A DNA stretch of 64,000 bases from Macrostomum lignano (Eukaryota): positions 186,001-250,000 of the forward strand of contig NIVC01000788.1 of assembly GCA_002269645.1 (NCBI GenBank), given 5' to 3'. The stretch's first letter is position 1; each line of letters opens with the position of its first letter. A model generated the notes under the pieces. That model worked only from the letters and a program-made list of their open reading frames with translations. It had not been told where the DNA came from and made no database searches. Shown here piece after piece: positions 9,816 through 62,957 of this stretch. The position numbers and the translations under genes were made by a program.

Positions 9816-10214
9816 ATCACAATGTTTCAATTAGAGCAGAGCTGTTCAATATCGCGTACTTTTATTAAGTCGGAAAATCACAGCGGTGTGAAACCAGTTC
9901 AGCGCTCAGTTAGCTGGAAAGAGACTGAACGAAACCCTAGAACTGGAATTTGAGCAGCTGGATTATTTGCTCAACTAATAGGAAGTCAAAGTAAACTCAA
10001 GCACAGATTGAGAGCAGCTTTCTCCTTTTGCGACTGCCTCAGTTGTGGCCAACATCGTCGAAAAATTTGTTTTTCAATGATATTATCGTATTCAAAAAAT
10101 AGGGTGCCTACTTTTAGTAGGCTGCTCCGAATTTTTAGTATTTAAATATAGATTTTAATCAATTGAGACGCAAAAATCTTAAACAGATTCTCCGAACTCT
10201 TTTGTGAAGAGTTT

Positions 10215-12966: not shown

Positions 12967-13011
12967 CTGGATGCCGCCTGGAGGCTGGGGTTGTTTGCGG
13001 AAGACTGAGAA

Positions 13012-13664
<653 letters not shown>

Positions 13665-15877: not shown

Positions 15878-16100
15878 TGGCGGGGGGTTGTGCGCACCCT
15901 GGCGCACTTCAAGCGACATTGTCACACAACCGGCGAGAGGCATTGCTCTCTATTCCGTCGACTCCCCTGAGAAGGCACACAAGCGCGCGGATACGTACGC
16001 AGTCATACGCACAGGCACACACTCACACAGGAGTGTAAAGCGGTCCAACTTTATTTATCGGTAGGCATGTACACTTCATGCTTTGGGGGTTGGCCCTTAA
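15878..16100 (-). mobile_element. SINE family A, copy 2 (head missing; abuts the 35-bp array)
   Basis: Shares cacaaccggcgagaggcattgct...gggggttggccctt with the other copies. Confidence 0.75.
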
Positions 16101-22296: not shown

Positions 22297-22473
22297 TCAA
22301 TAAACCCAATTGACTGGCACCCATTGCGGCTTAGTCTGAACCTGGTCAATGCAGTGCTTCAGCTGGCTTATTGTCTCCTCGATGTCATTATTAACAATCT
22401 TCTGATCGAAATAGTGGCCGTAGTGCCGCTCTAAAAGTTCGCTTTCCTTGGCCAGGCGCTCCAGACTTCCGTC
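22297..22473 (-). CDS. CASK: CASK terminal exon ([14 protein letters not shown]...[10 protein letters not shown])
   Basis: Acceptor cttgtgcag. TGA at 22297-9. Confidence 0.97.
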
Positions 22474-25400
22474 CTGCACAAGCGAAATTGATACTTGATG
22501 ATCAGGTCAGTGTCTCCTGACTGAGGGGACAATAGTGTATCAATAGTAAAAGTTTTACGGCACTCACATTGAGCCCGTGCACGTCGCTCATGGCGCTGAG
22601 CTCCGGGGCGGCAATGAACACAACGTAGGGCGCAAATTCTGCCGTTCGAAGCACGCGCAACGCCTGCGGCTCCACGTCGAGAATAGCGATGCGACCCTGC
22701 CGGTGAATGTCCCGGATGGTATCCAACTTGGTGCCGTACATGGCGTCCTCATGGGTGCCGTACTCCAGGTACTCGTTGTTGGTTATATCGCGCATCATCT
22801 CCTCACGTCCGACAAAATAATAGCTGCGACCATTCACCTCCCCTTTGCTGGGCAGTCGGGTCGTGTCTGCGGGTTGGGGAGGGCATTTAAGTTCAGCGAT
22901 TTTAAACGACAGTTAAAGACAGAGGACAGTTGCGCAGGGTTGGCAACCAATCAGAATCAGTGGTGAGGAGGGGGTTGGCAACCAATCACAATCAGTGGTG
23001 AAGAAGTGGCTGGCAACAAATCAGAATCAGTGGTGAAGAAGTGGCTGGCACCAATCAGAATCAGTGATGGGGGAGGGGGTTGGCAACCAATCAGAATCAG
23101 CGGTGTTGAGGTGGCTGGCAACCAATCAGAATCAGCGGTGGGAGGTGGCTGGTAACAACCAATCAGAATCAGCGGTGGGGAGGTGGCTGGCAACCAATCA
23201 GAAATAGCGGTGGGGAGGTGGCTGGTAACAACCAATCAGAATCAGCGGTGGGGAGGTGGCTGGCAACCAATCAGAATCAGCGGTGGGGGGTGCGCTGGCA
23301 ACCAGTCAGCAGCCGGAAGTCTCACGCGGAATCGGATACGCGAAGCGGTCAGGCGCAGTCTGTATGAGCGTATTTTTGATGTGCCGCCTGCCAACTCCAT
23401 GAGCCCCCAGCAGCACCAGAGTCTTCCGCCGGAAGTTGGTCAGCCGCACCACCTCTTCGTAGGTGACCATCTCCAGCTGGTCGTAGGGAGTCGGCGCCGA
23501 TGCTGATGACGCCGCAGTGGACGAGGCGGCAAGGCCCGAGCCCGAGGCGTGCTTGCTGCGCGACTTGCCGCCGCCTCCGCCGCCGCCGCCGGAGCGCCAG
23601 CCGTGATGTCGACGGCCGAACGAGAAAAACGGCAGGCCAGAACAGTTCAAAGCGCTGTCGAGCTTCTTGGAGCGCTCGATGGCGCTGCAGGCGGTGCGCC
23701 ATTCTTGCAGCTCCGGCGAGGGGATCAGGCTGGCCGGCGTGTTGGCCGGTGCGTTCCACGACCGAGCCTGCGAAAATGGCGCGGCGGAGTCAGTAGGGTA
23801 GAGAGTAGAGTGGATTAGTAGGGTAGAGAGTAGAGTGGATCAGTAGGGTAGACGGTAGAGTGAGTCAGTAGGGTAGAGAAGAGGGGTCAGTAGGGTAGAC
23901 GGTAGAGTGGGTCAGTAGGGTACAGAGAAGAGTGGGTCAGTAGGGTAGAGGGTAGAGTGGATCAGCAGGGTAGAGAGAAGAGTGGATCAGTAGAGAGAAG
24001 AGTGGATCAGTAGAGAGAAGAGTGGATCAGTAGGGTAGACGGTAGAGTGGGTCAGTAGGGTAGAGAGTAGAGTCAATCAGTAGAGTAGAGAGAAGAGTGA
24101 ATCAGTAGGTTAGATGGTAGAGTAGGGTAGAGAGTAGATTGGATCAGTAGGGTAGAGAGTAGAGTGGATCAGTAGGGTAGAGAGAAAAGTTGATCAGTAG
24201 GGTAGAGATTAGAATGGGTCAGTAGGGTAGAGAGTAGAGTGGGTCAGTAGGGTAGAGAGTAGAGTATATCAGCAGGGTAGAGAGTAGAGTGGATTAGTAG
24301 GGTAGAGAGTAGAGTGGATCAGTAGGGTAGACGGTAGAGTGAGTCAGTAGGGTAGAGTAGAGGGATCAGTAGGGTAGACGGTAGAGTGGGTCAGTAGGGT
24401 AGAGAGTAGAGTGGATCAGCAGGCTAGAGAGTAGAGTGGATTAGTAGGGTAGAGAGTAGAGTGGATCAGCAGGGTAGAGAGTAGAGTGGATCAGCAGGCT
24501 AGAGAGTAGAGTGGATTAGTAGGGTAGAGAGTAGAGTGGATCAGTAGGGTAGACGGTAGAGTGGGTCAGTAAATTTAGAACAGATTCAGTTGCTGACCTG
24601 CCACCAGTTGTGATCGTCCTTGCTGATGACCTGCAGGATGTCGCCAACCCGGAAGCGGATGCCAGCCTGGGGGCAGGGGTTCAATTCGTCGTCGTCCGGA
24701 TTGTAGCTGAACATGGCCTTCACGTAGATCTGCGGGTTAATAGAGGAAATCAGAATAACTAGCACCAGAGCAGCCACGGAACTTCACCATTCACGGTTTG
24801 TGAAGCTTGGGGATTGTGAAGCTTGGGGATTTGAAGCTTGGGTTTGGGAAGTTAAGGAATCTTGAAGTTTGGGGATTGTGAAGATTAGGGATTAGAAGCT
24901 TGGGGATTTGAAGCTTGGATTTGGGAATTTTAGGGATCGTGAAGCTTGGATTTGGGGAGTTAAGGAATCTTGAAGCTTGGGGATTTGAAGCTTGGGTTTG
25001 GGAAGTTAAGGAATCTTGAAGCTTGGGGATTGTGAAGATTAGGGATTAGAAGCTTGGGGATTTGAAGCTTGGATTTGGGAAGTTTAGGGATCGTGAAGCT
25101 TGGGGATTTGAAGCTTGGGGATTTGAAGCTTAGGGATTTGAATCTTGGGCTTGGGAAGTTTAGGGATTGTAAAGTTTGGGTTTGGTAAGTTTGGGGATTG
25201 TGAAGCTTGAGGATTTTGAAGCTTAGGTGTTTGTTTCAAATAGTAACAATAGCAGCGAAATATAATAATAAATTTTTACCTCGCACTGCATCGGGTGATT
25301 CCGGTAGCTGGGCACAATTTTGAGCGTTACACTGCCTCTGGCCTCCTTCTGCAATCAATTGATAACACCCAGCAGGTGCAGCAGGTGCAGTAGTAAGTTT

Positions 25401-28400
25401 GCTATATTATAAATTATTTCTTATTAACGATTAACAGAGCGAAAAACAATTGAAGTTAATTCGCTTAAAAAATCACTTTCAATACGAAAATCGTTAGTGT
25501 ACTTTTATATAAAAGTACATGTTAAAGACAGTAGCCTCCGGGTAATGTAATAATGAGACTAACGAATTACTCTGTCTCCAACACCTAATCAGGTTAGACT
25601 GGCAGATCTTCTCTCCACATTTCTTCAGCTGAATTCGTACATTAAAACTATCGAAAAAATTGATTATTACTGAATTGAACAGATTATTTGAAGAGCAAAA
25701 CTCTCAGTAAGATCTCAGTTTCTGTTAATCAAGCAATAAAAATAATGTAATTATTAATAACGCAAATCGAACCTATATTACCAATCGGTTTTATAGCAAC
25801 ACTTCAAAGCGCTAGTAAAGTTTTTTTATTTAAAAAGTACCTCCTTAGCCGCCGAGTGACTGCCCGCCGCGGTTCGAGGGCCGCCGGGCCGCCCGGCAGG
25901 GTGGGACACCAGCCTCAGCGTCACCCTGCCGCGCAAGTCCATCTGGACGTGTGATGTTCATCCGGCCGAGATGAGAGCGGTAAATACGCTTACTTATAAA
26001 GTAACAATTCTAGTGAATAAAAGAACTAGGGATAGTAGCCCAGCGGTTATAGTGCCCGCTTTCCATTCATCTGGTCTGGATTTCAGGCGGGTTCGAATCT
26101 TTGCGGCCATTTAAAAAAATTTATCAGGGTTTTTCATAACAAAAAGCATTTCTAACTACTGCTAATAGCGTGCAACAATGCCGTTATAATTTGAAATTAT
26201 CAATTGATATTTGACAACGCTCAATTACTAAGCACTTCCCCGATATGTATCGAAAGATAGTATCGTGAATCAGAAAAACACACACCAGCATTCGTTGTAG
26301 AACTTCCACTGATTGGCCAATGACTGGTTCGCCATTGATTTCTCGAATCTCGTCGCCAACGTGCAGAGTGCCTGAGGAAAAATATGGCATATGTAAATAT
26401 GAATAACTTGGAAAAAGTACATTGATGACTACGAGCGTGTTTTGAGAATTATATGATCAAACTCACCTTGCCGGTGAATCATTCCACCGTGCATGATTCG
26501 GGCCACAATTATCTTGCCGTCCTCAGACATCTTCAGAGTGATTCCCTACAATTTATAACAAATTGATTTGTTATTGATAAGTCATTGGATGGATGGGTAA
26601 CGCTAAAGCTGAGCTCACCATAGGCTCGTTAGTATTCTTCTGAAACTGCACCAGGCGCACACGGGTCACATTGTCCATCTCAACCTCGGGAGGCTCCTCC
26701 GCGTCGCCGTTCAAATAGGACGACACTGGCGGCGGGGTCACTCTTATTGCCTGGTCGCTGTACACATCCTGGGCTAGCACGTCGTGCGCTTGCAGCAGGG
26801 CCTGCGGGTGGCAGTGGAGGGCTGTGTTCTATGCAGGGACTGCCTGTCCCACAGTGGGGCCGGGTCGGCCCTGAACTCAAAGGGGTTGCCAGCGGATGGT
26901 CTCGCTCAAAAAGCAGTTGGATATCCTCAAAAGAAGTCCAGTAAAAAAAGTTGCCAACACACAAGAGCCGAGAAAGCAGCCCTATCAAGCACCCACGGGA
27001 CCCGGAGAAATGAGCATATTCAACAAAAATCGATAATGAAATCGAGACCAATCAATCCATGCGAAGCCTAGTTGAGGCTTACCCACAGGACAATATCGTC
27101 TCGATGGCCGCACAGCATTTAATAAAAATGCGGAACGAAGACTTTCGGGGAGAGAGAGAGAGACAGGCAACTCAAATGTCTGAGTCCCCTGTAGCAGTGG
27201 TGTTAATAGCTGGGGAAATGTGCTGACAGCAAAGAGGGCAGGCGAGCAAAGTGGAAGCCAGTCGTAAATAGGCATAGCAAGACGGAGTTAAAGGGGGGAA
27301 GCGTAGATGAAGCATTAATTAGCCTATAGCGCTTGCACTTGCGCCGCCGCCGCTCCCACTCCATTGGGCAGCTGGGATTGGGGAAAATTACAGCTTGACA
27401 GACGGGCGGACAGACTCTGCGTGAGACAGCAGTATAGAGAGCCGATTTGGTAAAACAAAACTAACGGGATGCAAGCGGCACCTCCGGCGTGACTGTCCAT
27501 TTAATCCGAATGCCACAGTGTGAGGAAAATAAGCCGGATATTGCGGACAACCGGAGAAGCGAAGAGAGGAGGATTAGAGAGCGCGGGAGAGGCGGCTGAC
27601 ACCGATTTTAATTAGACTCGTGTAGATTTTCATTGCAGAGGTGGATTAGGATTACGAAAATACAAGCCGAGACAGCAATTAATATTTCGGCCAACACAGC
27701 AACTGGATGTGTTTTCTGAGATTCTCGGATAGTAGAGCAGCGTCTTAGGCGTAGACAGGGGGCTTCAGGGCGATTCTGGAGAGGATTCAGGGCGATTCTT
27801 GGGAGGATTCAGGGCGATTCTTCGGGAGGTTTCAGGGCGATTTTTAGTGAGGTTTCAGGGCGATTCTTGGGGAGGATTCAGGGCGATTCTTGGGGAGGTT
27901 TCATGGTGACTTTTAGTGAGGTTTCAGAGCGATTCTTGGGGAGGATTCAGGGCGATTCTTGGGGAGGTTTCATGGTGACTTTTAGGGAGGATTCAGGGCG
28001 ATTCTTCGGGAGGTTTCAGGGCGATTTTTAGTGAGGTTTCAGGGCGATTCTTGGGGAGGATTCAGGGCGATTCTTGGGGAGGTTTCATGGTGACTTTTAG
28101 TGAGGTTTCAGAGCGATTCTTGGGGAGGATTCAGGGCGATTCTTGGGGAGGTTTCATGGTGACTTTTAGTGAGGTTTCAGAGCGATTCTTGGGGAGGATT
28201 CAGGGCGATTCTGGGGAGGGTTCAGGGAGATTCTTGGGGAGGATTCAGGGCGATTCTGGGGAGGGTTCAGGGAGATTCTTGGGGAGGATTCAGGGCGATT
28301 CTGGGGAGGGTTCAGGGAGATTCTTGGGGAGGATTCAGGGCGATTCTGAGGAGGGTTCAGGGAGATTCTTGGGGAGGATTCAGGGCGATTCTGGGGAGGA

Positions 28401-31400: not shown

Positions 31401-34400
31401 GCGGGTCATTCAGTGGGTCAACATGGATGACTCACTGGTGATGAAGATGAGAGGCGGATACGAGACTCGGGCAGAGATGAACTGAGACTCTCACCCTGAG
31501 ATGCGGCCCATTGAGCAGCTGGCGCAGCTGCAGGCAGTCTGCTACATAATCTTTGTCGTGGCACTCGGCCAGGCAGTCCAGGGCGTCTTGAGTTCGCGAC
31601 ACAGCGTCCGCCGGTATCTGGCCGCGTATGCTGGCGCCCAGGTTTCTGCTGTTGATCTGGTCGTAGAGCTGACAGGAAAGCGGGGGGGGGGGTGGCGTCT
31701 GTGTTTTAAAAGCACCATAGGAGATACGAGCGAGTATTGAAATACTCGTATTCCAAAATTAAAGTTGACAAGCAAGCGAGCAGACAAATATAATCGAGCT
31801 ATGACTAATTTGAGTTCAGTTTCAGGTCATAAATCAATTCATGCAGTTTACGTCAACGATAGTTATTTTAGCTATTAAATCAATTAAGTTTAAGCCAGTT
31901 CAGTTGAGATTAGTTTACTTCAGTTCACTTCATTTGAGTTCAGTTCAGTTCAGTTCAGTTTAGTTCAGTTCAGTTCAGTTCAGTTCAGTTCAGCTAAGCT
32001 CAGCTTTCTGTTCAGCCCATCAGCTCACGAACGCAAAAGAATGAAAAATAGAAATAAAGAAATAAAAGGGTACAATGCTGTGCATACTCCCTCATTCCCG
32101 CATTCTGAAGAAATCAAAGCAAGTCATATTTCAAGTCAAGCACTCGTGCTACTGGGTGCTAATCCAGCTGTATTTATTTATAAACTCAGCTGTGAATCTT
32201 AATAACAGAAAATATCTAAAACACACAAACACATACGCGCAAAGATTGCATAACATAAATCACTAACAAAACTGTCCAGTTGGACTGACAGGATCCAGTT
32301 AAAATACAGTTAGCTTAATTTATTATGAAACACCCAGGTCACTAGAATCCACCCCAAACCCTAGCAGCGTACAGTCGCGCGCAGCCCTAACACCAATTTC
32401 AAGATATATTTGTTTGTTAGAAAACGCAAACTAATGATTAACGATTTCCTAAAGCCTGCTCTTCTCCGACTTGAGCCCTCGTGCCTGAGGGGAGGTCAAA
32501 TTTTAGTTGAGGAAAAAAACTCCGACTAATGATGCTGAGCAAAAACTGTTTGAGCAGTCAAAGTCCGTGACAGTCGGAGGCACCAGCGGAATAGGCCTCA
32601 TTATCAGCAATAAAAAATCTCGTTTGCGAAAACTTTTTAATGACAAAGAAGAATTTGCTGTTCCTGAAGGCTTTCGAGTTTAAATTTTTTTTGCTGTTCA
32701 AAAGCCTCACTCAACGAATCAAAGAGTCGAGTTTGGTCAGGAGTGCCAAGATTGATGTCAGCAGCAATAAGATTGGTGTCAGGAGCACAAATATTGGTGT
32801 CAAGAGTGCCAAGATTGGTCGTCAGGAGTGCCAAGATTGGTTGTCAGGAGTACCAAGATTAGTTGTCAGGAGCACCAAGATTGGTTATCAGAAGCACCAA
32901 GATTGGATGTCAGGAGCATCAAGATTGGTTATGAGGAGGAGCACCAAGATTGGTTATCAGGAGTGGCAAGAGTGGTGTCAGGAGCACCAAGATTGGTTAT
33001 CAGGAGTGGCAAGAGTGGTGTCAGGAGCACCAAGATTGGTTATCAGGAGTGGCAAGAGTGGTGTCAGGAGCACCAAGATTGGTTATCAGGAGTGGCAAGA
33101 GTGGTGTCAGGAGCACCAAGATTGGTTGTCAGGAGCACCAAGATTGGTTATGAGGAGCACCAAGATTGGTTATCAGGAGTGGCAAGAGTGGTGTCAGGAG
33201 CACCAAGATTGGATGTCAGGAGCACCAAGATTGGTTATGAGGAGCACCAAAATTGGTTATCAGGAGTGGCAAGAGTGGTGTCAGGAGCACCAAGATTGGT
33301 TGTCAGGAGTGGCAAGAGTGGTGTCAGGAGCACCAAGATTGGTTGTCGGGAGTGGCAAGAGTGGTGTCAGGAGCACCAAGATTGGTTGTCAGGAGCACCA
33401 AGATTGGATGTCAGGAGCACCAAGATTGGTTTCAGGAGTGGCAAGAGTGGTGTCAGGAGCACCAAGTGTGGTGTCAGGAGCATCAAGATTGGTGTCAGGA
33501 GTGCGAAGCAAGGTTGGTTGATGGGATTGCCAAGATTGGTTGCCAGTGGCGCAGAAAGAGGCACCCAAAGCAAAATCTGGGCCTCAATGAGCTTAAATCT
33601 TTGAGCCGCTGAGGGGGCCTTAGATTTGATATGATTTATATCCATTTTTGCGCGCTCCGATGCGGAAAAACATCCCACTAATATTTTCTATCATCGTCGG
33701 TTCGCTGAAAAACCGTCTTTCCCAAACGATATCGTTTCCATAGCAACGAATAAAAAGTACGCGCGCAAGCACAGAAGCGTATGGGAGAAGCCTAGGAAAT
33801 CCAGTATCTGGTGGCATCGAATCGCGTGACACTCAGCTTCTGAAAACTATAAAGTTATCTACATCACAAAACTACCCCCGCTCCAAAATCCCATAAATTA
33901 GCGAATTTTTTCAGCATCCAGATAATCTGAGCCAATCCGATAAGGCGCATTTATTAGCAAAGCTTTTTTGCACACATTGCAAAACAAAAATTGATTTTTT
34001 TCTCCCCGATTTGCTTGCCGTGCGTTTTTTTTGAGTAGCCAGCACGCCACGCGTCCAATTGATGATGAAGAAGGAGTGTAGAGAAGTCGATTTAAAACAC
34101 GCAATGCAGCTCAATATGCCGGATGCTTGAAGAAGTTTTTGCTCGGACTTCTATGCTGGGCAAAATATAATAATAATAATTATTATTATCAGTATTATAT
34201 AAGTGCTAAGCTCCCGTCGTGAGCTGGGAACTATTCGTGCTTGATTAGAATCCCTCTTTGTGACCACACCAGCGCATCTCTCCTCTCTCCAGTTTAGGCG
34301 CACTTATTAAAAGAAGATTGCAAAGACAGAGTCGCCAGTCAGTTTCATTCGGGGCTGGGAAATACGAAGGCGGGAAGCAATGGGAATTGAAGGTCAACGC

Positions 34401-52400: not shown

Positions 52401-55400
52401 CCTTCTCCTTGGGGTTTAGTCGCGATTCCGGAGCAAATTGATCGCATCAAGATAGGCCCGAAACCAACTAAAGATGGAAGAAACGTGAATGGAAGAAAAA
52501 AATGGGAAAAGGCAGAGCAAGTGCATGCGCTTCAGTGCCTATTGGGCTAGAAAATATGACATAAATAAACCAACTCAGATCTATAGATCTGTCAAGCCTA
52601 ATATAGACACGCTCGAATAGATATTGGCTAACATTAACTAATAGGCCGAGGGTAAAATCCATATGCACATGCAGACAGCCTGGCCCAATTAGCTGGTACT
52701 TGAGACGCACGGTGCGATGAGTCAACTACTGGACTCGAATTTGTCAGTAGTCTCGACGCATTTGACGCTTGTATCACTAAATTTAACTTAACCAAAGCCA
52801 TAAGGCATTGTATGTGTAGCCATAACGCTTGTATGTGCCCAGGAATATTGTAATAATGTTACTAATATGGGAAGTAATAGAGCAATAACAAAAATCGATA
52901 TCATAACAATTAAAATTAACCGTATAGCTACTACAAAATCCACTTCTCTGAGACTCATTCCAATGACTCTTCGACTTTAGCACCAAGTATGATTTTATCA
53001 ATCATACATTCAGGTGACGGTTCAAGAAGCTTGAACAGTTAGGCCTGCACAACCTTGAAGAACAACAAGAACACACTGTACGCCACAATCAAATAGCAAC
53101 ACTGCACTTTCAGCCGCCCCCAACCCAAAAGGTTCAAAGACAGTATTGGAGAAAAGTCGATAACACTTTAGCTAAGGGCAAGACAAGAATAATTGGGAGT
53201 TGCAATGCAAATAAAGAGAATTTTTCAGACCAAATTAGAAGGTCAAAAACAGAGCAGCACGTCACAAAGGAGTAGCGAATCCTTAGCAGCATATCAACTC
53301 TCAGATATAGGGAGTCAATCAATAAGTTGTTAACAGCAGTGCTTAGCTGTTATTCATAATTGCAAGCATAAGAAACTATTGAATATAATATATATACTGA
53401 AAAGTTGTCGGGTGTACTTGAAAAACAATTCAAGCAAAGTGCTCTACTAGTAGTAGTATCCAGTAATAAAATAGTCATTCTGTATAAAAGACAAGATTTA
53501 CAACTCTTTGATGACAATACTGGACTTAAAATATCAGCCTGCCAGTCTATCAATCTACCAGTCTATCAATTTATCAGTCTATCAATCTATTAATCAACCT
53601 AGCAGTCTATTAGTCTATAAATCTATTAGTCTATAAATCTATTAGTCTATCAATCTATCTATCCATCTATCTATCGATCTATCAGTCTATCAATCTATCA
53701 GTCCATCAATCTGTCTATCAGTCTATAAATACATTATTCTATCAATCTATCTATAGATCTATCAGTCTATCAATCTATCAATCGACCAGTCTATCAATCT
53801 ATCAATCGACCAGTCTATCAATCTATCAATCGACCAGTCTATCAATCTATCAATCGACCAGTCTATCAATCTATCAATCGACCAGTCTATCAATCTATCA
53901 ATCGACCAGTCTATCAATCTATCAATCGACCAGTCTATCAATCTATCAATCGACCAGTCTATCAATCTATCAATCGACCAGCCTATCAATCTATCAATCG
54001 ACCAGTCTATCAATCTATCAATCGACCAGTCTATCAATCTATCAATCGACCAGTCTATCAATCTATCAATCGACCAGTCTATCAATCTATCAATCGACCA
54101 GTCTATCAATCTATCAATCGACCAGTCTATCAATCTATCAATCGACCAGTCTATCAATCTATCAATCGACCAGTCTATCAATCTATCAATCGACCAGTCT
54201 ATCAATCTCTCAATCGACCAGTCTATCAATCTATCAATCGACCAGTCTATCAATCTATCAATCGACCAGTCTATCAATCTATCAATCGACCAGTCTATCA
54301 ATCTATCAATCGACCAGTCTATCAATCTATCAATCGACCAGTCTATCAATCTATCAATCGACCAGTCTATCAATCTATCAATCGACCAGTCTATCAATCT
54401 ATCAATCGACCAGTCTATCAATCTATCAATCGACCAGTCTATCAATCTATCAATCGACCAGTCTATCAATCTATCAATCGACCAGTCTATCAATCTATCA
54501 ATCGACCAGTCTATCAATCTATCAATCGATCAGTCTATCAATCTAGTAATCTACCATCTACCATTTGATTAAAAAACATTTAAGAAAAAATAGATGTTAG
54601 CATAATAAACATTTGCTAAAGAACTGATCATAGTAGCAACAGTAGCAAAATACGCGCATATAACTACCAATCCAGCATGTACCAGCAAATTCGGGCACAA
54701 ACAATGAGCCTACCTCCAGCAGGGAGAGCAGCGCGCAGTCCTCGAAGACGCCCTGCAGTAGGTCGCGATCCTGTTCGCTGCAATCGGTGAGGCACTGCAT
54801 GTCCTCCAGGCTGTCCAAGATGGTCGACACGGCTGATAAAGAGTTAAGAGGATCAAATATTTGCAATTGCTGTAGACACTCACTAATCGGTAGCCTTATA
54901 TAATATCATTTTATTGCGTGCGAATACAAATGAAACTAATTGGCTCAAAAAATGTATGACAGAGTCGACAATAAAGACAGAGATCATTAATTACAAAGCT
55001 CCTAGATAGGCGTAGGCTGTTGAATATTAAAATAACTTAGCTACATTGACTAGCAACACGAGATACCTCACTGTCAAAGGAAGGCTAGCCTAAGATTTTT
55101 ACCTCTTGTATAATCTGTTCTTTTTTGGCAAAGGTATACAGCTATGCAGTCATGCTGGCTCTCGTTGAGGCGGAATTAAACAGCAAACAGAGTCTAAAAG
55201 CTAAAGAGATGCACTTCTTTACGCTGGCTTTTAACTGACCTGCTTCAGGGGATAGAAGCTCCATTAGTTTTATTTTAAGACTAGTACTATTTCTCACCTT
55301 ACTGAGTCAAGGTCGTTTTAGGGAAGAAATATATAGTATATGCATACATCTGATGCATGAAGCCATTATCCGTTTATATACAGCATTCACTATCCTGACA

Positions 55401-58400
55401 GCATTCACTATCCTGACAGCATTCACTATCCTGACAGCATTCACTATCCTGACAGCATTCACTATCCTGACAGCAGTGAGAGCATTCACTATCTTGACAG
55501 CATTCACTATCCTGACAGCATTCACTATTCTGACAGCATTCACTATTCTGACAGCATTCACTATTCTGACAGCATTCACTATCCTGACAGCATTCACTAT
55601 TCTGACAGCATTCACTATTCTGACAGCATTCACTATCCTGACAGCATTCACTATTCTGACAGCATTCACTATTCTGACAGCATTCACTATTCTGACAGCA
55701 TTCACTATTCTGACAGCATTCACTATTGTGGCAGTGTTAACTATCCTGACAGCATTCACTATCCTGACTTGTTGAAAAAATTGATACAGTTTTTAGAAGA
55801 AACTATAAGTAGAAAGGGTATAGTGGTAACATGAGTACACGTAAGTTAGTTATATTTAGTTGGCTTGAACACTGCTACAATACGGGTACTATGGCTAGAA
55901 CAGGAATCGAACCCGGGCCCTTTGATATAAGAGAAAAATATAAACTATGTAAAGATGCAAGGTAGAACTTACCTTTGTAAGAGGGCACCCTCCGAAAGGC
56001 AATCATATTTAAATATTTTATCTACTCGCAGTTATTAAATTATGTTTACTCAACTAGAGACTAATTAGCCATATGGAAATTATTAAACAGGTAAAAACTG
56101 ACGATTACAAAGGAACTCTGTAATGGACGACTAATTTTATCAAAAATAAATAGTCAATCGCCTATTTTAGTAAAGTTTTCTCCAACACAGTTGATTGGAT
56201 AGGGTGATGAGACAATCAGCCAATCACCAGTCTTGCTTCTAAATTTTGCATCACAATCTGGAATTCATACACGTTGCAGACCATTCGTTGAGGCGTTTTT
56301 TGCTTCTTATGGAGTCCTAATAAAAAAGCTATAATATTTTAACGAATGTTCTGCTGCGCCGCTTTTGACTTGCAATGTGCGCCTATAAGTTTACCTCCTG
56401 TTTCGGCCAATCTCAAACGTTTCTAAGCGCAACAAAAAGTTAAGCCCGTGTTTTCTTTAATTTCGTGTGCCTGCGTTGCTCCGTGATGGCGCAGCGTGCA
56501 AAATAACTGTTAGGGGGATCACCCTTGGTAATTCTGCCGTTAATCTGCACTTAATGACTCAATCTCTCTGTTTACTGTTCTCTCTGTCTAGTTCTCTCTT
56601 ACCCTCTTTCGCAATTCTGATAGGCTCTTTAACCTTACCTCTTTCCTCAGTCGCGCACACCTACCCTCCTGATCTGCACCCAATTCACCTTCCCACTTAT
56701 CTGAAATCTTCGACTAGAAAAATTTTGCAGATGACGATAATATTAACAAAAAAAATATTTGATTACACCTGCTCCAATGTGCAGATGTGCAACCGACAGC
56801 TCAGGCTGCTCAGCCGCAGCCATCGCGCGGCGCATCTGAAGGCTGCGTACGGCTGTTCAGTCCAAGGAGTGGGAGGTCGCCACACACCCTCAATTACCCC
56901 AGCTAATGCTGGCACCCATTTTACAGCTGGGTGAACTGAAGCAGTGCAGAGTTAAGTGTCTTGCTCAAGGACACAAATTGTTCTGAGTGGGATCGGGAAT
57001 CGAACCCCTGACCTTCAAGTCGTGAGTCCGACGCTTGCAATCCGTTATATTCATTTTATCCGTATGAGTGTAAATCATCTCGATTATAAAACCTGTGCTC
57101 TACACTATACGATCCCAACACACTTATGAAAAAATCGATACTTTGCGAAATAAACAAACTAGACTAATTTAGAATTCCTTGTGTGTGTTAGGAGTTGACC
57201 GCGGCAAGATGGTTAATATGATAACAAGTGCGCACAGCGCGGGGCTAAGAAGCACAGAGCGGCTCTTTAGTATTGGGGTATACAGGATTAACGAAACTAC
57301 TTGGATGTAATCAGAGAGATGGTTAGCACACGGGGCGTGATGAAAAAGGCATGATCACGGACTCTAGTCGCGCTTCGTTTTAGGATAAGAGAATATTGAG
57401 GCCGTGCACTTCTGCCAGTGTGCACAGAGTAAGATGGATATCTGAAATCGCTCAAATGGCATGTGCTAAATTGAGGAATTTGTTCCCACGCCGGCTTACA
57501 TTCTCTTTGTTGATTCGATTTTGGAGAAACTTTAATAGAGAAACTAGTTCAAGCATTTTTTGGATCTTCTTTTTTCATAATTCTATAAATATCAACGATT
57601 AGGTGTGATTTTCTAGATATTTTTATACTTTAGTTAACTTTTTATACATTCTTTAGGCAGGGGCTGTGTGCACTCTGGCACATTTCAAAGCGACATTGTC
57701 ACACAACCGGCGAGAGGCATTGCTGCCCATTCCGCCGACTCCCCTGAGCAGGCACACAAGCGCGCGGATACTTATGCAGTCATACGCACAGGCACACACT
57801 CACACAGGAGTGTACAGCGGCCTTAACTTTATTTATCGTTAGGCATGTACACTTCACTGTGCCTTGGGGGTTGGCCCTTAAGGGCGTTAGCTGCACAAGC
57901 AGAGCCAAGCCAAGATTCCAATTTAACCTCAAATTAATGCGACTGCACTTGGAATCGAGCCTGGGCCGCTGGGATCGCCGCGCCAGATCTTCTACCTACT
58001 TCTTCAAAACGGGTATGAAAGTTCGAATTTGGACCATAGACAGGTCCAATCTGTACAAATCTGTATCCCCATAAACAAGGCTACAACGTTTTTTATGTAC
58101 GTCTTGTATTTATGTTTCGAAGGATCTGTAACAGATGGAAATCTTTATTATCTAAATTTTATGCTTGCTGCAATGCTTCCAAAACTTGGTCTTGATTTGG
58201 ACACAGACACACCCGCAAACTTTTGATTCCCAAATCAAGTATAGCAATAGCAGTAATTGCTCTGTCCATTGTTTACAACTCATGAAAACTGTTCTTCAAA
58301 GTGAATCGGTTTTTTTTGGAAATGAAGGACAGCATTATGCCATCAATACCTCAGCTTGCACATCCCTGAAAAATTTCATTTCAAAATCATGCACAAAACT

Positions 58401-61400: not shown

Positions 61401-62957
61401 GGATTGAGATGGTGAGAAGGGAGATTGAGATTGTGAGAAGGGGGATTGAGATGGTGAGAAGGGAGATTGAGATTGTGAGAAGGGAGATTGAGATGGTGAG
61501 GAGTGAGATTGAGATGGTGAGAAGGGTGATTGAGATATTGAGACGGTGAGAAGGGAGATTGAGATGGTGAGAAGGGAGATTGAGATGGTGAGAAGGGGTA
61601 ATGAGATTCTGAGAAGGGGGAATGAGATCAAGCTTTGCCCCTCACCAGCGGCAGCGACTTCGTCCTCCAACGGGTCCCGTTCCTCGCCTTCGGCGGCCCA
61701 TTTGGCGCTGGACACCACAGCTAGGATGGCGCCTTTCAGCTTCCGCCTAGAATTGAACCGCTTCATCTCTTCCACAGACTCGCTCAGGTGCAGCTTGGGC
61801 ACCCGGCTTCTGTCGGCAATCCACGGATGCCGGAGCGCCTCATCGACTGTCATTCGCCGTTTCGGGTCAAGGTCGAGCAGCCGGTTGACCAGGTCTTTCG
61901 CCTCGGTGGATATGTGGCTCCACACGCGAGGCTTCATCTGGGGAGCGGGGGCAGTGTGGCCCTTATGATTGCATAGCAAGCCCTAAGCTAGTCTAGCAAT
62001 TTTTGCGCGTACTTACTCACTTCAAAAAGCAGTCAATAATGAATACTCGTATTTACTAAGAGTAGTATCTGCTGGAGTCCTAGAAAATAAATAAATACGC
62101 TTACCCGACACCGGCCGCTAAGGATCTGCTCAAACAGCAAATTGCCTGTGCCGCAGAAGGGCAGGGAGCCGCTCAGCAGGGTGAACAGCAGAACGCCGCA
62201 GCCCCACGCGTCCACAGGCTTGCCGTACGGCTCGCGACGGACAACCTCCGGGGCCATGAAGTGCGGCGTGCCGATACGGCCTGAGGGATTGTAGGTGAGT
62301 ATGAGGTAGATAGCTGTGTATAGGGTGCAGCTACCCTCAGGTCCTTCAGCAGTACCACTCAGGTCCTTCAGCAGTACCACTCAGGTCCTTCAGCGGTACC
62401 CCTCAGGTTCTTCAGTGGTACCCTTAGGTCTTTCAGCGGTACCCCTCAGGTCTTCAGCGGTACCCCACTCAAGTCCATCAGCGGGTACGCCACTCAATTT
62501 CTTCAGTGGGTACGCCACTCAAATCCTTCAGTGGGTACCCCATTTAAGTCCTTCAGCCGGTACGCCATTTAACTCTCCAATGCAATATTACAAATCAAAT
62601 TTGAGCCTAAAAACCTAAAGCAAGCAGAAAAACTTGCCAAATCCTACTTAAAATAGTTGGTAAAGCGCGTTTTACTGCGAATCTAATTTGGATTGCAAAT
62701 AAAAAGTTAGGCCGAGTTCTATAATAACACAATATCACAATTGCTTATCTGTCTGTTGGCCACTTATCAGTTCTCATACAAGTACAAAAATGACAAAATA
62801 CACCCACTGGCCAGACACAAATAACGGACACAATTTCTAAGGGCGGAATCTGTCAGCCAACGGTGATATTTGCTGATAGGCAGAAGGCGCATCTGCTTAC
62901 CCATCTGGTCGGGTCTTAGGCTTATAGAGATATCTTGGTCTACATTAATTGGCGTGC
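22297..62957 (-). CDS. CASK: CASK/LIN-2 MAGUK gene, multi-exon span (5' kinase exons not found in the window, presumably beyond 64000)
   Basis: Twelve core exons join in frame at GT-AG sites with consistent phases. They give CaMK-like, L27N, L27C, PDZ, SH3, HOOK and GUK domains ending WVPVNWVY*, matching the CASK C-terminus (WVPVSWVY). Confidence 0.97.
22568..22866 (-). CDS. CASK: CASK GUK exon (HTTR...[16 protein letters not shown]...LDVEPQAL...FIAAP)
   Basis: Acceptor ccaacccgcag, donor AAT|gtgagt, 299 nt. Confidence 0.97.
22940..23305. repeat. About 35-bp array with a ccaatcagaatcag core, filling most of a CASK intron
   Basis: Tandem periodicity. Confidence 0.93.
23326..23767 (-). CDS. 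CASK: CASK exon, SH3 end, HOOK and GUK start (...[11 protein letters not shown]...[13 protein letters not shown]...[15 protein letters not shown]...YPIP)
   Basis: Acceptor attttcgcag, donor C|gtgaga, 442 nt, phase 0 to 1. Confidence 0.95.
23788..24570. repeat. 25-bp array cagtagggtagagagtagagtggat, filling a CASK intron
   Basis: Tandem periodicity. Confidence 0.95.
24598..24729 (-). CDS. CASK: CASK SH3 exon ([44 protein letters not shown])
   Basis: Acceptor aacccgcag, donor CAG|gtcagc, 132 nt. Confidence 0.96.
24800..25226. repeat. Degenerate array of about 15-bp gaagcttggggattt
   Basis: Tandem periodicity. Confidence 0.9.
25280..25348 (-). CDS. CASK: CASK PDZ C-terminal exon B ([23 protein letters not shown]); missed by the ORF track
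   Basis: Acceptor gattgcag, donor GAG|gtaaaa, 69 nt, phase 0-0. Matches canonical REMRGSITFKIVPSYR...CE. Confidence 0.94.
25841..25942 (-). CDS. CASK: CASK alternative PDZ C-terminal exon A ([34 protein letters not shown])
   Basis: GC-rich 102-nt island in an AT-rich intron, bounded by ccag| and GAG|gtactt, phase 0-0. The first 13 aa are paralogous to exon B (RGxVTL[RK][LI]V). Confidence 0.72.
26029..26134 (+). mobile_element. tRNA-derived element (SINE head or tRNA pseudogene) with intact Pol III A and B boxes, antisense to CASK
   Basis: A box TAGCCCAGCGG at 26036-46, B box GGTTCGAATC at 26090-99, T5 at 26130-34. The acceptor and T stems do not pair, so this is not a functional tRNA. Confidence 0.55.
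26286..26371 (-). CDS. CASK: CASK PDZ exon ([29 protein letters not shown])
   Basis: Acceptor tttttcctcag, donor CTG|gtgtgt, 86 nt. Confidence 0.96.
26467..26545 (-). CDS. CASK: CASK PDZ exon ([26 protein letters not shown])
   Basis: Acceptor attgtag, donor G|gtgagt, 79 nt. Contains the [12 protein letters not shown] signature. Confidence 0.96.
26619..26801 (-). CDS. CASK: CASK exon, L27C end to PDZ start ([14 protein letters not shown]...[14 protein letters not shown])
   Basis: Acceptor cacccgcag, donor ATG|gtgagc, 183 nt. Confidence 0.96.
27083..27118 (-). CDS. CASK: Candidate alternative first coding exon [12 protein letters not shown] (short PDZ-SH3-GUK isoform)
   Basis: ATG directly after an in-frame TAA. 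Donor TGG|gtaagc in phase 0, matching the exon at 26801. A GC-rich leader-like region lies at 27120-27600. Confidence 0.45.
27763..28412. repeat. Array of about 23-bp ttcagggcgattcttggggagga
   Basis: Tandem periodicity. Confidence 0.94.
28852..29663. repeat. 31-bp array (cagcaccaacaccccattatataccccagag) with 14-bp inserts
   Basis: Tandem periodicity. Confidence 0.95.
30560..31410. repeat. 26-bp array catttgatgactgagagacagtgggt
   Basis: Tandem periodicity. Confidence 0.96.
31495..31668 (-). CDS. CASK: CASK exon, end of L27N and start of L27C ([10 protein letters not shown]...[12 protein letters not shown]); missed by the ORF track
   Basis: Acceptor ctttcctgtcag, donor AGG|gtgaga, 174 nt, phase 0-0. 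Aligns with CASK LYDKIN...LTQPHFM. Confidence 0.94.
32735..33500. repeat. Array of about 21-22-bp gtcaggagcaccaagattggtt / gtcaggagtggcaagagtggt
   Basis: Two alternating variants. Confidence 0.94.
35125..35890. repeat. 23-bp array agatccctacaactaaagatccc
   Basis: Tandem periodicity. Confidence 0.94.
36365..36632 (+). mobile_element. SINE family A, copy 3 (opposite orientation, 3' truncated)
   Basis: Reverse complement of copies 1, 2 and 4; begins with the tRNA-like head. Confidence 0.75.
37245..39072. repeat. 22-bp array aaccgattgggattatgaattg with higher-order blocks
   Basis: Tandem periodicity. Confidence 0.96.
39620..39934 (-). mobile_element. tRNA-derived SINE family B with CORE/MIR-like central domain, full-length copy
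   Basis: Minus strand has a tRNA head (GTAGCCTACTGG...GGTTCGATTCC), then ccttgagcaaggcacttaactc...ctgtaaaatggg resembling the MIR/CORE consensus, then an (ATT)n-like tail. Confidence 0.75.
41118..42545 (-). CDS. Large intronic ORF, candidate alternative first exon of CASK (476 aa, Q/A/P/S-rich, Cys motifs); unspliced read-through gives the 564-aa ORF to 40851
   Basis: Non-repetitive, GC-rich 1.4-kb ORF with aatATG and an upstream in-frame TAG. Donor CAG|gtaaca falls after codon 476 (phase 0), matching the phase-0 acceptor at 31668. Confidence 0.7.
43484..43502 (-). promoter_or_regulatory. TATA box (TATAAATA) with adjacent GC box; candidate internal promoter for the 41118-42545 exon
   Basis: Minus strand reads gggcggggcgaTATAAATAgcg. 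It is followed by a pyrimidine-rich leader ending in donor GGG|gtgagc at 43121-2, upstream of the ATG at 42545. Confidence 0.45.
45835..46612. repeat. 34-bp array ggatcccacatcccgaatcacaaatccagatcat
   Basis: Tandem periodicity. Confidence 0.96.
46910..47170 (-). mobile_element. SINE family B copy with an internal deletion of about 40 bp in the CORE region
   Basis: Aligns to 39620-39934 but jumps from ggcacccatt to gctcaaggac. Confidence 0.75.
47518..49352. repeat. 35-bp array (gagagcacaaattccagatcccaaatcccgaatct) switching near 48640 to a related 28-bp unit (gagactccgaattccagatccgaaatct)
   Basis: Tandem periodicity; source of the 722- and 691-aa ORFs. Confidence 0.97.
50035..50830. repeat. 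20-bp array ccaatctgagaaccgaaatt
   Basis: Tandem periodicity with one block of about 288 bp duplicated. Confidence 0.95.
51545..52203. repeat. 69-bp array of about 9 units with internal palindromes
   Basis: The 23-aa periodicity of ORF 51550..52170 reflects the unit. Contains agttctagaact and ccgatt-ttct-aatcgg. Confidence 0.96.
53025..53275 (+). pseudogene. Possible decayed CR1/L2-type LINE ORF2 C-terminal fragment
   Basis: The frame [17 protein letters not shown] resembles the RLxxLGLxxLExRR motif of CR1/L2 ORF2 ends. Only this weak motif supports the call. Confidence 0.2.
53530..54545. repeat. ctatcaat-based repeat homogenising into 24-bp cagtctatcaatctatcaatcgac
   Basis: Tandem periodicity. 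Confidence 0.96.
54714..54832 (-). CDS. CASK: CASK exon, L27N ([40 protein letters not shown])
   Basis: Acceptor ctttatcag, donor GAG|gtaggc, 119 nt. Aligns with CASK [22 protein letters not shown]. Confidence 0.95.
55380..55768. repeat. 18-bp array acagcattcactatcctg
   Basis: Tandem periodicity. Confidence 0.96.
55973..56006 (-). CDS. CASK: Candidate alternative first coding exon [11 protein letters not shown] (kinase-less CASK isoform)
   Basis: aatATG with an upstream in-frame TAG. Perfect donor AAG|gtaagt in phase 1, matching the phase-1 acceptor of the L27N exon at 54832. Confidence 0.5.
56745..57035 (-). mobile_element. SINE family B copy, slightly 5' truncated
   Basis: Aligns to 39620-39934 up to gagtccgacgct. 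Confidence 0.75.
57658..57985 (-). mobile_element. SINE family A, copy 4
   Basis: Near full-length match to copy 1. Confidence 0.75.
59525..61628. repeat. 21-bp array gagatggtgagaagggggatt, beginning about 17 nt into the intron after the 61646 donor
   Basis: Tandem periodicity. Confidence 0.97.
61646..61937 (-). CDS. CASK: CASK exon, kinase C-lobe end and calmodulin-binding segment ([10 protein letters not shown]...[17 protein letters not shown]...)
   Basis: Acceptor ctccccag, donor G|gtgagg, 292 nt, phase 0 to 1. Contains the RRKLKGAIL CaM-binding motif. Confidence 0.96.
62105..62280 (-). CDS. CASK: CASK exon, kinase subdomains VIII-X ([29 protein letters not shown]...GRCR)
   Basis: Acceptor ccctcag at 62281-2, donor gtaagc at 62103-4, 176 nt. 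Close match to the CASK CaMK-like domain. Confidence 0.96.
62332..62570. repeat. 22-bp array gtaccactcaggtccttcagca
   Basis: Tandem periodicity. Confidence 0.9.
62901..62957 (-). CDS. CASK: CASK 57-nt exon, kinase activation segment (G)[18 protein letters not shown](G)
   Basis: Acceptor ctttacttactacag and donor G|gtaagc. Phase 1-1, matching the next exon. Only the CASK-compatible frame is open; the other two have TAG/TAA. Confidence 0.65.

What the first reader, a model, noticed from the sequence alone, without database searches (positions are those of the whole stretch)
22297..62957. A ladder of internal first exons that would strip CASK modules one at a time
Seen: each of three successive N-terminal introns holds an ATG-initiated ORF with an upstream in-frame stop and a good donor, in exactly the phase of the next CASK exon. 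These are 55973-56006 (phase 1, to L27N), 41118-42545 (phase 0, to the L27N-tail/L27C exon) and 27083-27118 (phase 0, to L27C-tail/PDZ). Known: invertebrate CASK loci make kinase-less short forms (Drosophila CASK-alpha, C. elegans lin-2b), and the two L27 domains bind different partners (L27N SAP97/Dlg, L27C LIN-7/Veli). Inference: one locus could encode full CASK, an MPP-like L27-L27-PSG form, an L27C-only form with a long disordered N-terminus, and a p55-like PSG form. Each could carry PDZ exon A or B, giving a combinatorial scaffold system.
Basis: partly seen in the sequence, partly recalled or inferred. Interest (0 to 1): 0.8.

Follow-up and report, generated by a model that had tools for sequence, protein, structure and literature searches.

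The report
Internal start exons in flatworm CASK
Two of the three proposed internal start exons of this Macrostomum lignano CASK gene (the long one and the last short one) look like real coding exons kept in sister gene copies. They would make the two kinase-less CASK forms already known from nematodes and flies, while the first short one looks like chance.

Summary
The window holds most of a Macrostomum lignano CASK gene on the minus strand. My exon model equals the transcript-based protein Mlig003891g1.

All three ATG-started ORFs, their upstream stops, donors and phases are exactly as described. As a class, such mini-ORFs occur at chance frequency in these introns.

**altA (55973-56006):** no support. 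It is not conserved in any paralog.

**altB (41118-42545):** a real coding exon.
- Codon usage, GC periodicity and ORF length all exceed shuffled controls.
- Among three near-identical copies there are 9 synonymous and 8 non-synonymous changes (dN/dS about 0.3).
- Composition and conservation drop exactly at the donor.
- It is annotated as Mlig023611g1.
- A diverged paralog has a collinear 484-codon homolog in the same L27N-L27C intron, ending at a phase-0 donor at the homologous residue.
- In both loci the next coding segment downstream is the L27C exon.

**altC (27083-27118):** its last residues plus the donor are conserved in the orthologous intron of another paralog (score 33; nothing else reached 24 in 329,278 positions).

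The locus therefore probably encodes a LIN-2B-like form (L27C-PDZ-SH3-GK with a 476-residue, probably disordered head) and a CASK-alpha/p55-like form. No splice junction was seen, so RNA evidence is still needed.

The parts
41118..42545 (-). altB: ATG-initiated 476-codon coding exon (Q/A/S/P-rich, 62% A+S+P+Q+T+G), with donor CAG|GTAACA at 41117. Proposed alternative 5' coding exon spliced to the L27C exon.
   Evidence: Coding log-odds are 0.515 per codon in frame 0, against 0.17 and 0.25 in the other frames and 0.19 +/- 0.04 in shuffles. GC1/2/3 is .68/.60/.74. There are 9 synonymous and 8 non-synonymous changes among three copies, P=0.015. Variable-site density is 16/1428 in the exon against 10/267 just after the donor, P=0.004. 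It is annotated as PAA74977.1 Mlig023611g1. A homolog lies in the same intron of paralog L006 at 45328-46779.
27083..27118 (-). altC: ATG-initiated 12-codon exon ([12 protein letters not shown]), donor TGG|GTAAGC. Proposed 5' coding exon of a PDZ-SH3-GK short form.
   Evidence: Paralog L002 has ...CGLSKDDLVIW|GTGAGC at 27388-27420, on the sense strand of the orthologous L27C-PDZ1 intron, inside an ATG-started 33-codon ORF (27322-27420). The 7-mer BLOSUM62 score is 33, and no other of 329,278 six-frame positions reaches 24. The D codons differ synonymously.
55973..56006 (-). altA: ATG-initiated 11-codon + 1 nt ORF with donor AAAG|GTAAGT. A candidate only; judged a chance ORF.
   Evidence: The donor scores 12.5 bits, the best in the locus. 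There is no homolog before any donor in the paralog loci. Copy L005 has an F-to-Y change and has lost the upstream stop. The sequence is unique, not a repeat.
62105..62280 (-). CASK kinase exon ([12 protein letters not shown]...)
61646..61937 (-). Last CASK kinase / CaM-binding exon; ends in phase 1
54714..54832 (-). L27N exon (phase-1 acceptor, phase-0 donor)
31495..31668 (-). L27N-tail / L27C exon (phase-0 acceptor and donor); proposed target of the altB donor
   Evidence: It is the first coding-like segment downstream of altB on this strand.
26619..26801 (-). L27C-tail / PDZ-start exon (phase-0 acceptor); proposed target of the altC donor
26467..26545 (-). PDZ exon 2 (GITLKM...), phase-0 acceptor. 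The annotated 5'-partial models P0018/P0154 start at its first base.
26286..26371 (-). PDZ exon 3
25841..25942 (-). Alternative PDZ C-terminal exon 'B' ([12 protein letters not shown]...), a paralog of the next exon
   Evidence: It is present in P0018/P0154 and absent from P0155.
25280..25348 (-). PDZ C-terminal exon 'A' ([23 protein letters not shown])
24598..24729 (-). SH3 exon
23326..23767 (-). SH3-end / hook / GK-start exon
22568..22866 (-). Guanylate-kinase exon
22297..22473 (-). Last GK exon with stop codon (22299-22297)

Best explanation
The window carries one copy of a Macrostomum lignano CASK gene. Besides the full-length kinase-containing mRNA, two internal 5' coding exons are most likely used.

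(1) altB (42545-41118) starts translation at its own ATG and encodes about 476 mostly disordered residues with a few conserved helical blocks. Its phase-0 donor splices to the L27C exon. The product lacks the CaM-kinase domain and the first L27 domain but keeps L27C-PDZ-SH3-GK. This is the architecture of C. elegans LIN-2B.

(2) altC (27118-27083) encodes 12 residues and splices to the exon that holds the last L27C helix and the start of the PDZ domain. The product is a PDZ-SH3-GK protein with a short unique head. This is the architecture of Drosophila CASK-alpha and vertebrate p55/MPP1.

Both exons predate the divergence of the M. lignano CASK paralogs and have been kept in different subsets of them. 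altA is a chance ORF.

Shown: the exons, their phases, their coding signatures and their paralog conservation. Inferred: their transcription starts (own promoter or spliced-leader acceptor) and the actual junctions to the CASK exons.
For: **Gene identity**
- Best hits are M. lignano CASK proteins.
- The exon model equals P0155.
- Pfam finds Pkinase, L27, PDZ, SH3 and GK in P0155.

**altB is coding**
- Codon log-odds are 0.515 per codon in frame 0, against 0.17/0.25 in the other frames, at most 0.32 antisense, and at most 0.31 in 500 shuffles. The canonical CDS scores 0.66. The read-through tail scores -0.36.
- The GC block coincides with the ORF and falls from 0.67 to 0.48 at the donor.
- The ORF is longer than 1998 of 2000 shuffles.
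- Three genomic copies differ by 9 synonymous and 8 non-synonymous changes (dN/dS about 0.31, P=0.015). The other two frames give 2 and 15.
- The 267 nt after the donor vary 3.3 times more and carry 1-nt and 2-nt indels.
- The only relative among 1.84 billion representative proteins is the transcript-based model Mlig023611g1, which uses the same ATG.

**altB belongs to the CASK locus**
- Paralog L006 (P0156 gene) has an ATG-started 484-codon ORF at 45328-46779 on the sense strand, between its L27N exon (34763-34879) and its L27C exon (51540-51716).
- That ORF has coding log-odds of 0.469/0.169/-0.182 in the three frames.
- It shares collinear conserved blocks with altB. The last block abuts a phase-0 donor at the homologous residue.
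- In both loci the next coding-like segment after the donor is the L27C exon, and nothing else in the downstream intron is conserved.

**altC**
- The only high-scoring match lies in the orthologous intron of L002, directly before GTGAGC, in phase 0. Its D codons differ synonymously and its I/L/V residues are swapped.
- The predicted altC product has a complete PDZ, SH3 and GK.

**Precedents**
- LIN-2B comes from a second promoter and lacks the CaMK domain and one L27 domain (PMC7260190).
- CASK-alpha comes from an independent start and has a short unique N-terminus before the PDZ domain (PMC4075472).
Against: - No RNA evidence for either junction could be examined.
- The public annotation treats altB as a separate single-exon gene (Mlig023611g1). 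It shows no altB- or altC-initiated CASK model. Exact look-ups of the predicted isoforms found nothing.
- No gene is called at altB in copy L005, although the ORF is intact there.
- One copy (NIVC01000910.1) has a 1-nt deletion that frameshifts altB at codon 278. This is either an assembly error or a sign of weak constraint.
- altB similarity to the L006 exon is low (26% identity, best local E=4e-4) and lies in low-complexity sequence.
- altC conservation covers only about 10 residues.
- altB is absent from two of the four paralog groups and altC from two others.
- The synonymous-excess test rests on 17 changes.
- My donor matrix is a generic approximation.
Confidence: 0.6

Rival explanations
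1. altB is an independent, lineage-restricted gene nested in the CASK intron, as the public annotation has it (Mlig023611). It is translated on its own and never joined to CASK. Its phase match with the L27C exon is a coincidence inherited by the paralog.
For: It is annotated as a separate single-exon CDS, next to but distinct from the CASK model on the same contig. No fused protein was found by exact look-up. Nested genes are copied along with their host when a locus duplicates, so paralog conservation alone does not prove a link.
Against: Coding signal, composition and conservation stop exactly at a donor that is conserved in position and phase in two paralogs. The read-through tail looks non-coding and is frameshifted between copies. 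The two poly(A) hexamers after the donor are not conserved. In both loci no other coding-like or conserved segment lies between the donor and the L27C exon. The 323-residue annotated CDS is an artefact of a 1-nt deletion in that one copy.
Confidence: 0.17
2. Short CASK forms in this species arise mainly by spliced-leader trans-splicing onto internal phase-0 acceptors. The 35-nt leader ends in ATG, so it supplies an in-frame start codon. This route may add to, or replace, the proposed first exons.
For: The M. lignano leader is CGGTCTCTTACTGCGAAGACTCAATTTATTGCATG (PMC8629364). Two transcript-based models (P0018, P0154) are 5'-partial and start at the very first base of the PDZ2 exon, directly after its AG, with an in-frame TAG just upstream. 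The annotation pipeline sets 5' ends from leader-containing reads (PMC5730564). The acceptors of the L27C, PDZ1 and PDZ2 exons are all phase 0, so leader-ATG plus exon is in frame at each.
Against: No leader-containing reads could be examined. A PDZ2-start product would lack the first strand of the PDZ domain, because the Pfam PDZ match begins in the preceding exon. The PDZ1-PDZ2 intron is only 73 nt, which leaves little room for an outron. A fragmentary transcript assembly could give the same 5' end. This idea does not explain the conserved coding signatures of altB and altC.
Confidence: 0.3
3. The full ladder: all three exons, altA included, are used first exons, giving four N-terminal classes.
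For: altA has the strongest donor in the locus (12.5 bits) and is phase-compatible. Shuffles give only 0.2 such ORFs per intron at 9 bits or more.
Against: No paralog has a related peptide before a donor in the corresponding intron. The 11-residue ORF carries a non-synonymous change, and the upstream stop is lost in a near-identical copy. There is no coding-potential signal. Phase-compatible mini-ORFs are expected by chance.
Confidence: 0.07
4. altB is an internal cassette exon (42584-41118, 1467 nt = 489 codons) spliced in frame between the L27N and L27C exons of full-length CASK. The AG of the upstream TAG would serve as its acceptor.
For: The open frame begins right after ...tgtttAG, and both neighbouring junctions are phase 0.
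Against: In the L006 homolog the frame is closed by TGA with no acceptor at that place, and conservation starts at the ATG. A 489-residue insert would split the third helix of L27N. No annotated product is longer than 949 residues at the CASK locus of copy L005.
Confidence: 0.04
5. All three are chance ORFs in repeat-rich introns, with no function.
For: As a class, such ORFs occur at or below the shuffle expectation. GC-rich sequence gives long ORFs (mean 218 codons in shuffles).
Against: The coding statistics, synonymous excess and paralog homology of altB, and the paralog conservation of altC.
Confidence: 0.03

Closest known systems
C. elegans LIN-2B (short lin-2/CASK isoform from a second promoter)
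   Same: LIN-2B lacks the CaM-kinase domain and one L27 domain and keeps L27-PDZ-SH3-GK (PMC7260190). The altB-to-L27C product has exactly this domain set. The start lies in the intron between the two L27-coding exons.
   Different: The flatworm exon adds about 476 low-complexity residues, mostly predicted disordered (mean pLDDT 40; no Pfam domain). It has no relative outside M. lignano in the libraries searched. Promoter use has not been shown here.
Drosophila CASK-alpha (MPP1/p55-like products of the Cask/caki gene)
   Same: [quoted passage not shown] The altC-to-PDZ1 product has 12 unique residues followed by PDZ-SH3-GK.
   Different: The flatworm product would keep the last helix of L27C ([14 protein letters not shown]). 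I tested no sequence similarity to the fly N-terminus. The transcription start has not been shown.
Vertebrate p55 subfamily MAGUKs (MPP1; MPP2/MPP6/MPP7)
   Same: These have the same truncated architectures (PDZ-SH3-GK, or L27-L27-PDZ-SH3-GK). This rests on established knowledge of the family, not on a test here.
   Different: In vertebrates these are separate genes. Here, as in fly and worm, they would be isoforms of the CASK gene itself.
Spliced-leader trans-splicing in M. lignano, with a leader that ends in AUG
   Same: The organism trans-splices roughly 30% of its genes, and the leader ends in ATG (PMC8629364). One annotated CASK model begins exactly at an internal acceptor.
   Different: Use of the leader AUG to start a truncated CASK is my inference. 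No reads were seen.

Membership tests
CASK (MAGUK p55 subfamily) - host gene | N-terminal CaM-kinase-like domain, then two L27 domains, PDZ, SH3 and guanylate-kinase-like domain | tested here: met
   Pfam on P0155, which is identical to the window model over residues 208-949, finds Pkinase 42-306, two L27 matches, PDZ 512-588, SH3 and GK 758-935. Best database hits are CASK proteins of flatworms and other animals. The window itself holds only the last two kinase exons.
LIN-2B-type short CASK isoform | A dedicated 5' coding exon located between the exons for the first and second L27 domains | tested here: met
   altB lies in the L27N-L27C intron, has coding signatures and is conserved at the same place in paralog L006.
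LIN-2B-type short CASK isoform | In-frame splicing of that exon to the L27C exon | tested here: inconclusive
   The phases match in both loci (0/0), and the L27C exon is the next coding segment downstream. No junction read could be examined.
LIN-2B-type short CASK isoform | Transcription from a second, internal promoter | not testable with these tools
   No CAGE, RAMPAGE or leader-read data were accessible. An annotated transcript model covers altB.
CASK-alpha / p55-like short isoform | A short unique N-terminus directly before the PDZ domain, with no CaMK or L27 domains | tested here: met
   In the predicted product [12 protein letters not shown]+ALLQ..., Pfam finds only PDZ, SH3 and GK. Fourteen residues of the last L27C helix remain.
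CASK-alpha / p55-like short isoform | The exon is functional (under selection) rather than a chance ORF | tested here: met
   Protein-level conservation plus the donor in the orthologous intron of paralog L002. It is the only hit in 329,278 positions.
CASK-alpha / p55-like short isoform | An independent transcription start and use of the junction | not testable with these tools
   No expression data were available. Exact look-up of the predicted isoforms was negative.
SL trans-spliced mRNA (M. lignano) | Leader-containing reads that map to an acceptor with no upstream cis donor | not testable with these tools
   The only hint is indirect: a 5'-partial annotated CDS starts at the first base of the PDZ2 exon.

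The most novel reading that the evidence does not exclude
A single flatworm CASK locus combines the nematode-type internal start (LIN-2B-like, before L27C) and the fly-type internal start (CASK-alpha-like, before PDZ). Both would be ancestral to the Macrostomum CASK gene family and were then partitioned among paralogs after duplication: this gene has both, the Mlig010742 paralog has only the first, the Mlig028881 paralog has only the second, and the Mlig029367 paralog has neither. A third truncated form would start from the AUG of the spliced leader at the PDZ2 acceptor. This would mean that kinase-less CASK isoforms are an old and repeatedly maintained bilaterian feature, and that a fast-evolving disordered head can be grafted onto the L27C-PSG core.
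Probability: 0.3. Interest if true: 0.6.

Novelty: new member of a known kind. Interest (0 to 1): 0.42.

Why it matters
CASK is a conserved synaptic and epithelial scaffold. Its kinase and its two L27 domains recruit different partners. Worms and flies each make one kinase-less form from an internal start.

If a flatworm makes both types from one gene, and its paralogs keep one or the other, two things follow. Modular N-terminal truncation of CASK would be an ancient and selectively maintained way to rewire the scaffold. M. lignano, which is transgenic-ready and recently polyploid, would become a place to study subfunctionalisation of isoforms among duplicates.

There is also a practical point. 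The public annotation probably splits one isoform into a spurious orphan gene (Mlig023611g1, truncated by a 1-nt indel) and a 5'-partial CASK model.

Tried and rejected
- The first protein search used altB+L27C+PDZ1 and returned nothing. Poly-Q/P/A words swamped the word index, so the search was wasted.
- The N-terminal canonical query did not find an annotated kinase/L27 protein for this gene copy, only paralogs.
- The three near-identical copies (window, L001+L004, L005) differ by only about 1% in unique intron sequence. Simple conservation therefore cannot separate exon from intron for altA or altC.
- tblastn of altB against L002 and L003 found nothing. Their L27N-L27C introns are only about 1.1 kb and about 75 nt.
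- I rejected an altA-like 7-mer in L003 (RRLPSYL, score 27). It is in the wrong intron and has a poor donor.
- tblastx of all the introns against the paralog loci gave only shared repeats.
- A 28-nt block upstream of altC matches L002 but is not collinear, so I treated it as chance.
- I rejected a shared CAG|GGGAYT upstream of altC and its L002 counterpart as a common leader acceptor. The leader ATG would be in frame in L002 only.
- Exact look-ups of eight predicted isoforms were all absent.
- Gene identifiers were not found in any paper or supplement.
- The leader sequence is not in the window.
- Single-sequence AlphaFold gave only low confidence.
- I considered but did not test whether the altB C-terminal block is a degenerate L27N.

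Full report
**What the window is**

The finding spans a CASK gene on the minus strand. I mapped twelve canonical exons by six-frame reading and splice-site inspection. They run from two kinase exons (62280-62105, 61937-61646) to the stop codon at 22299-22297.

A protein search with the assembled 741 residues gave Macrostomum lignano CASK proteins as best hits. Cluster look-up then produced P0155 (Mlig003891g1, 949 aa). P0155 is identical to my model across every junction. Pfam finds Pkinase, two L27, PDZ, SH3 and GK in it.

The M. lignano annotation is transcript-based. It uses spliced-leader and poly(A) reads to set gene ends (PMC5730564).

I obtained two further near-identical genomic copies of the same gene: L001+L004 on NIVC01000910.1 and L005 on NIVC01000152.1. 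I also obtained three diverged paralog loci: L002 (P0001 gene), L003 (P0002 gene) and L006 (P0156 gene).

**Checking the observation**

All three candidates are as described.
- altA: ATG at 56006, 11 codons plus 1 nt, donor AAAG|GTAAGT, in frame with the phase-1 L27N acceptor.
- altB: ATG at 42545, 476 codons, donor CAG|GTAACA, phase 0, matching the L27C acceptor.
- altC: ATG at 27118, 12 codons, donor TGG|GTAAGC, phase 0, matching the next acceptor.

Each has an in-frame stop upstream.

The criteria themselves are weak. I counted first-ATG-after-stop ORFs ending at a donor of at least 6 bits in the required phase. The three introns hold 2, 2 and 1. Dinucleotide-type shuffles give 1.5, 12.2 and 4.1. 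The donor matrix I used is a generic metazoan approximation. The acceptors of the L27C, PDZ1 and PDZ2 exons are all phase 0, so a phase match discriminates little.

**altA**

Its donor is the strongest in the locus (12.5 bits). Nothing else supports it.
- No related peptide precedes a donor in the corresponding intron of any paralog. The best 7-mer (score 27, L003) sits in a different intron before a poor donor.
- Copy L005 has an F-to-Y change inside the 11 codons and has lost the upstream TAG.
- There is no coding-potential signal.

I treat it as a chance ORF, with about 7% probability of being real.

**altB is a real coding exon**

- The GC-rich block (0.67) coincides with the ORF and drops to 0.48 directly after the proposed donor. 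GC by codon position is .68/.60/.74, the same order as the CASK CDS (.63/.42/.75).
- I trained a codon log-odds model on paralog CASK exons and on the neighbouring GPCR gene.
  - altB frame 0: 0.515 per codon.
  - Other two frames: 0.17 and 0.25.
  - Antisense: at most 0.32.
  - Composition shuffles: 0.19 +/- 0.04.
  - Canonical CDS of the window: 0.66.
  - Read-through tail: -0.36.
- The open frame is longer than in 1998 of 2000 dinucleotide shuffles.
- Across the three copies there are 17 changes, 9 synonymous and 8 not (dN/dS about 0.31, binomial P=0.015). In the other two frames the split is 2 and 15.
- Variable sites are 3.3 times denser in the 267 nt after the donor (Fisher P=0.004). That tail carries a 1-nt and a 2-nt indel in different copies, and its two poly(A) hexamers are each altered in at least one copy.
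- A profile-free search of 1.84 billion representative proteins found one relative only. It is PAA74977.1 (Mlig023611g1, 323 aa), which starts at the same ATG. Its short length comes from a 1-nt deletion (CCCACC to CCCCC) in that genomic copy. The ORF is intact in the window and in L005.

**altB belongs to the CASK locus**

Paralog L006 is about 67% identical in the CASK N-terminal region to its cluster representative P0121. It carries an ATG-started 484-codon ORF at 45328-46779 on the sense strand. This lies between its L27N exon (34763-34879) and its L27C exon (51540-51716). Coding log-odds are 0.469/0.169/-0.182 in the three frames, and GC falls to 0.43 after its end.

The L006 ORF aligns collinearly with altB in these blocks:
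- DW..EALR.SL.A..AV near the N-terminus
- a poly-P run
- CTC
- ASTP..R
- RDT..LLYG..N (local E=4e-4)
- SV.DL..E...VG.I..RL

The last block abuts the donor in both genes: CAG|GTAACA here and ATG|GTGGGT there, both phase 0. The L006 L27C acceptor is also phase 0.

In both loci the first coding-like segment after the donor is the L27C exon. tblastx finds nothing else shared in the downstream intron parts. L002 and L003 have L27N-L27C introns of about 1.1 kb and about 75 nt and lack the exon.

A conserved donor at the end of a conserved ORF argues for splicing. The only conserved coding partner downstream is CASK.

The head has no Pfam domain. It is 62% A/S/P/Q/T/G. It is mostly of low confidence in a single-sequence AlphaFold model. 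Helices are predicted at the conserved blocks, and one of them runs across the altB/L27C junction (low confidence).

**altC is conserved too**

In L002, within the orthologous L27C-PDZ1 intron and on the sense strand, the sequence reads ...TGC GGG CTG AGT AAG GAT GAC CTC GTC ATC TGG|GTGAGC. The window reads TGC GGC CAT CGA GAC GAT ATT GTC CTG TGG|GTAAGC.

The last seven residues score 33 in BLOSUM62. No other of 329,278 six-frame positions in the three paralog loci reaches 24. Nucleotide identity over those codons is only about 57%, with synonymous D codons and I/L/V swaps. This is the pattern expected of protein-level selection.

Both loci have an in-frame ATG: 12 codons here, and 33 codons at L002 27322-27420. 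The 36-nt open frame here has no usable in-frame acceptor, so a cassette exon is excluded. L003 and L006 lack the element. The sequence is not a repeat.

**How this compares with what is known**

The C. elegans lin-2 locus uses two promoters. LIN-2B lacks the CaMK domain and one L27 domain (PMC7260190).

Drosophila Cask uses two independent starts. CASK-alpha has a short unique N-terminus before the PDZ domain and resembles p55/MPP1 (PMC4075472).

altB-to-L27C reproduces the first architecture and altC-to-PDZ1 the second.

**A complementary mechanism noticed on the way**

Two annotated models (P0018, P0154) are 5'-partial. They begin at the first base of the PDZ2 exon, directly after its AG, with an in-frame TAG upstream. 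The M. lignano spliced leader ends in ATG (PMC8629364), and this acceptor is phase 0. Trans-splicing there would therefore give an in-frame M+GITLKM... product. That product would lack the first PDZ strand. Its reality is uncertain.

**Limits**

I saw no RNA reads. Exact look-ups of the predicted isoforms were negative. The identifiers appear in no paper that I could search. The selection test rests on 17 changes, and the altB paralog similarity lies in low-complexity sequence.

Overall I put 0.6 on the two-exon explanation, 0.17 on altB being a nested independent gene, and 0.03 on pure chance.

Noticed in passing
window 11848-13020 (minus strand): An intronless 391-codon ORF downstream of CASK encodes a rhodopsin-family GPCR (Pfam 7tm_1, E=6e-72). 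It has the strongest coding-potential score in the window.
   Followed up: partly
window 25841-25942 and 25280-25348 (minus strand): These are two homologous exons for the last PDZ strand: [12 protein letters not shown]... and [12 protein letters not shown].... The full-length model P0155 uses only the second. The 5'-partial models P0018/P0154 include both in tandem rather than as alternatives. A similar extra exon appears in the paralog model P0010.
   Followed up: partly
L001 10001 = window 26545: The annotated 5'-partial CASK models start exactly at the PDZ2 acceptor. With the ATG-terminated spliced leader of M. lignano this would be an in-frame start, which suggests internal trans-splicing.
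   Followed up: partly
L004 about 10831 (= window 41714): A 1-nt deletion (CCCACC to CCCCC) in the NIVC01000910.1 copy frameshifts altB. This explains the truncated 323-residue public protein Mlig023611g1. It may be a long-read assembly error.
   Followed up: partly
window 304-1695, 8897-9757, 10145-11339, 47451-49631, 50000-50900, 53614-54569, 59434-61641 and others: The introns and flanks are packed with long minisatellite arrays that stay open in several frames. They inflate ORF lists and blur copy-to-copy alignments.
   Followed up: no
window 57650-57920, 36390-36665, 15910-16055, 6016-6330; also L003 42660-42930 and L006 23595-23750: A dispersed short repeat is shared with the paralog loci (translated motif ...[36 protein letters not shown]...). 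It is probably a SINE-like element.
   Followed up: no
window 23540-23640 (hook region of CASK): The basic 'hook' segment between SH3 and GK is replaced by a Gly8 run and an S/A-rich stretch ([35 protein letters not shown]). This differs from the lysine-rich motif of vertebrate CASK as I recall it.
   Followed up: no
window 42545-42531 and 25942-25928: altB and PDZ exon B both begin with the residues MDLRG. This is probably coincidence.
   Followed up: no
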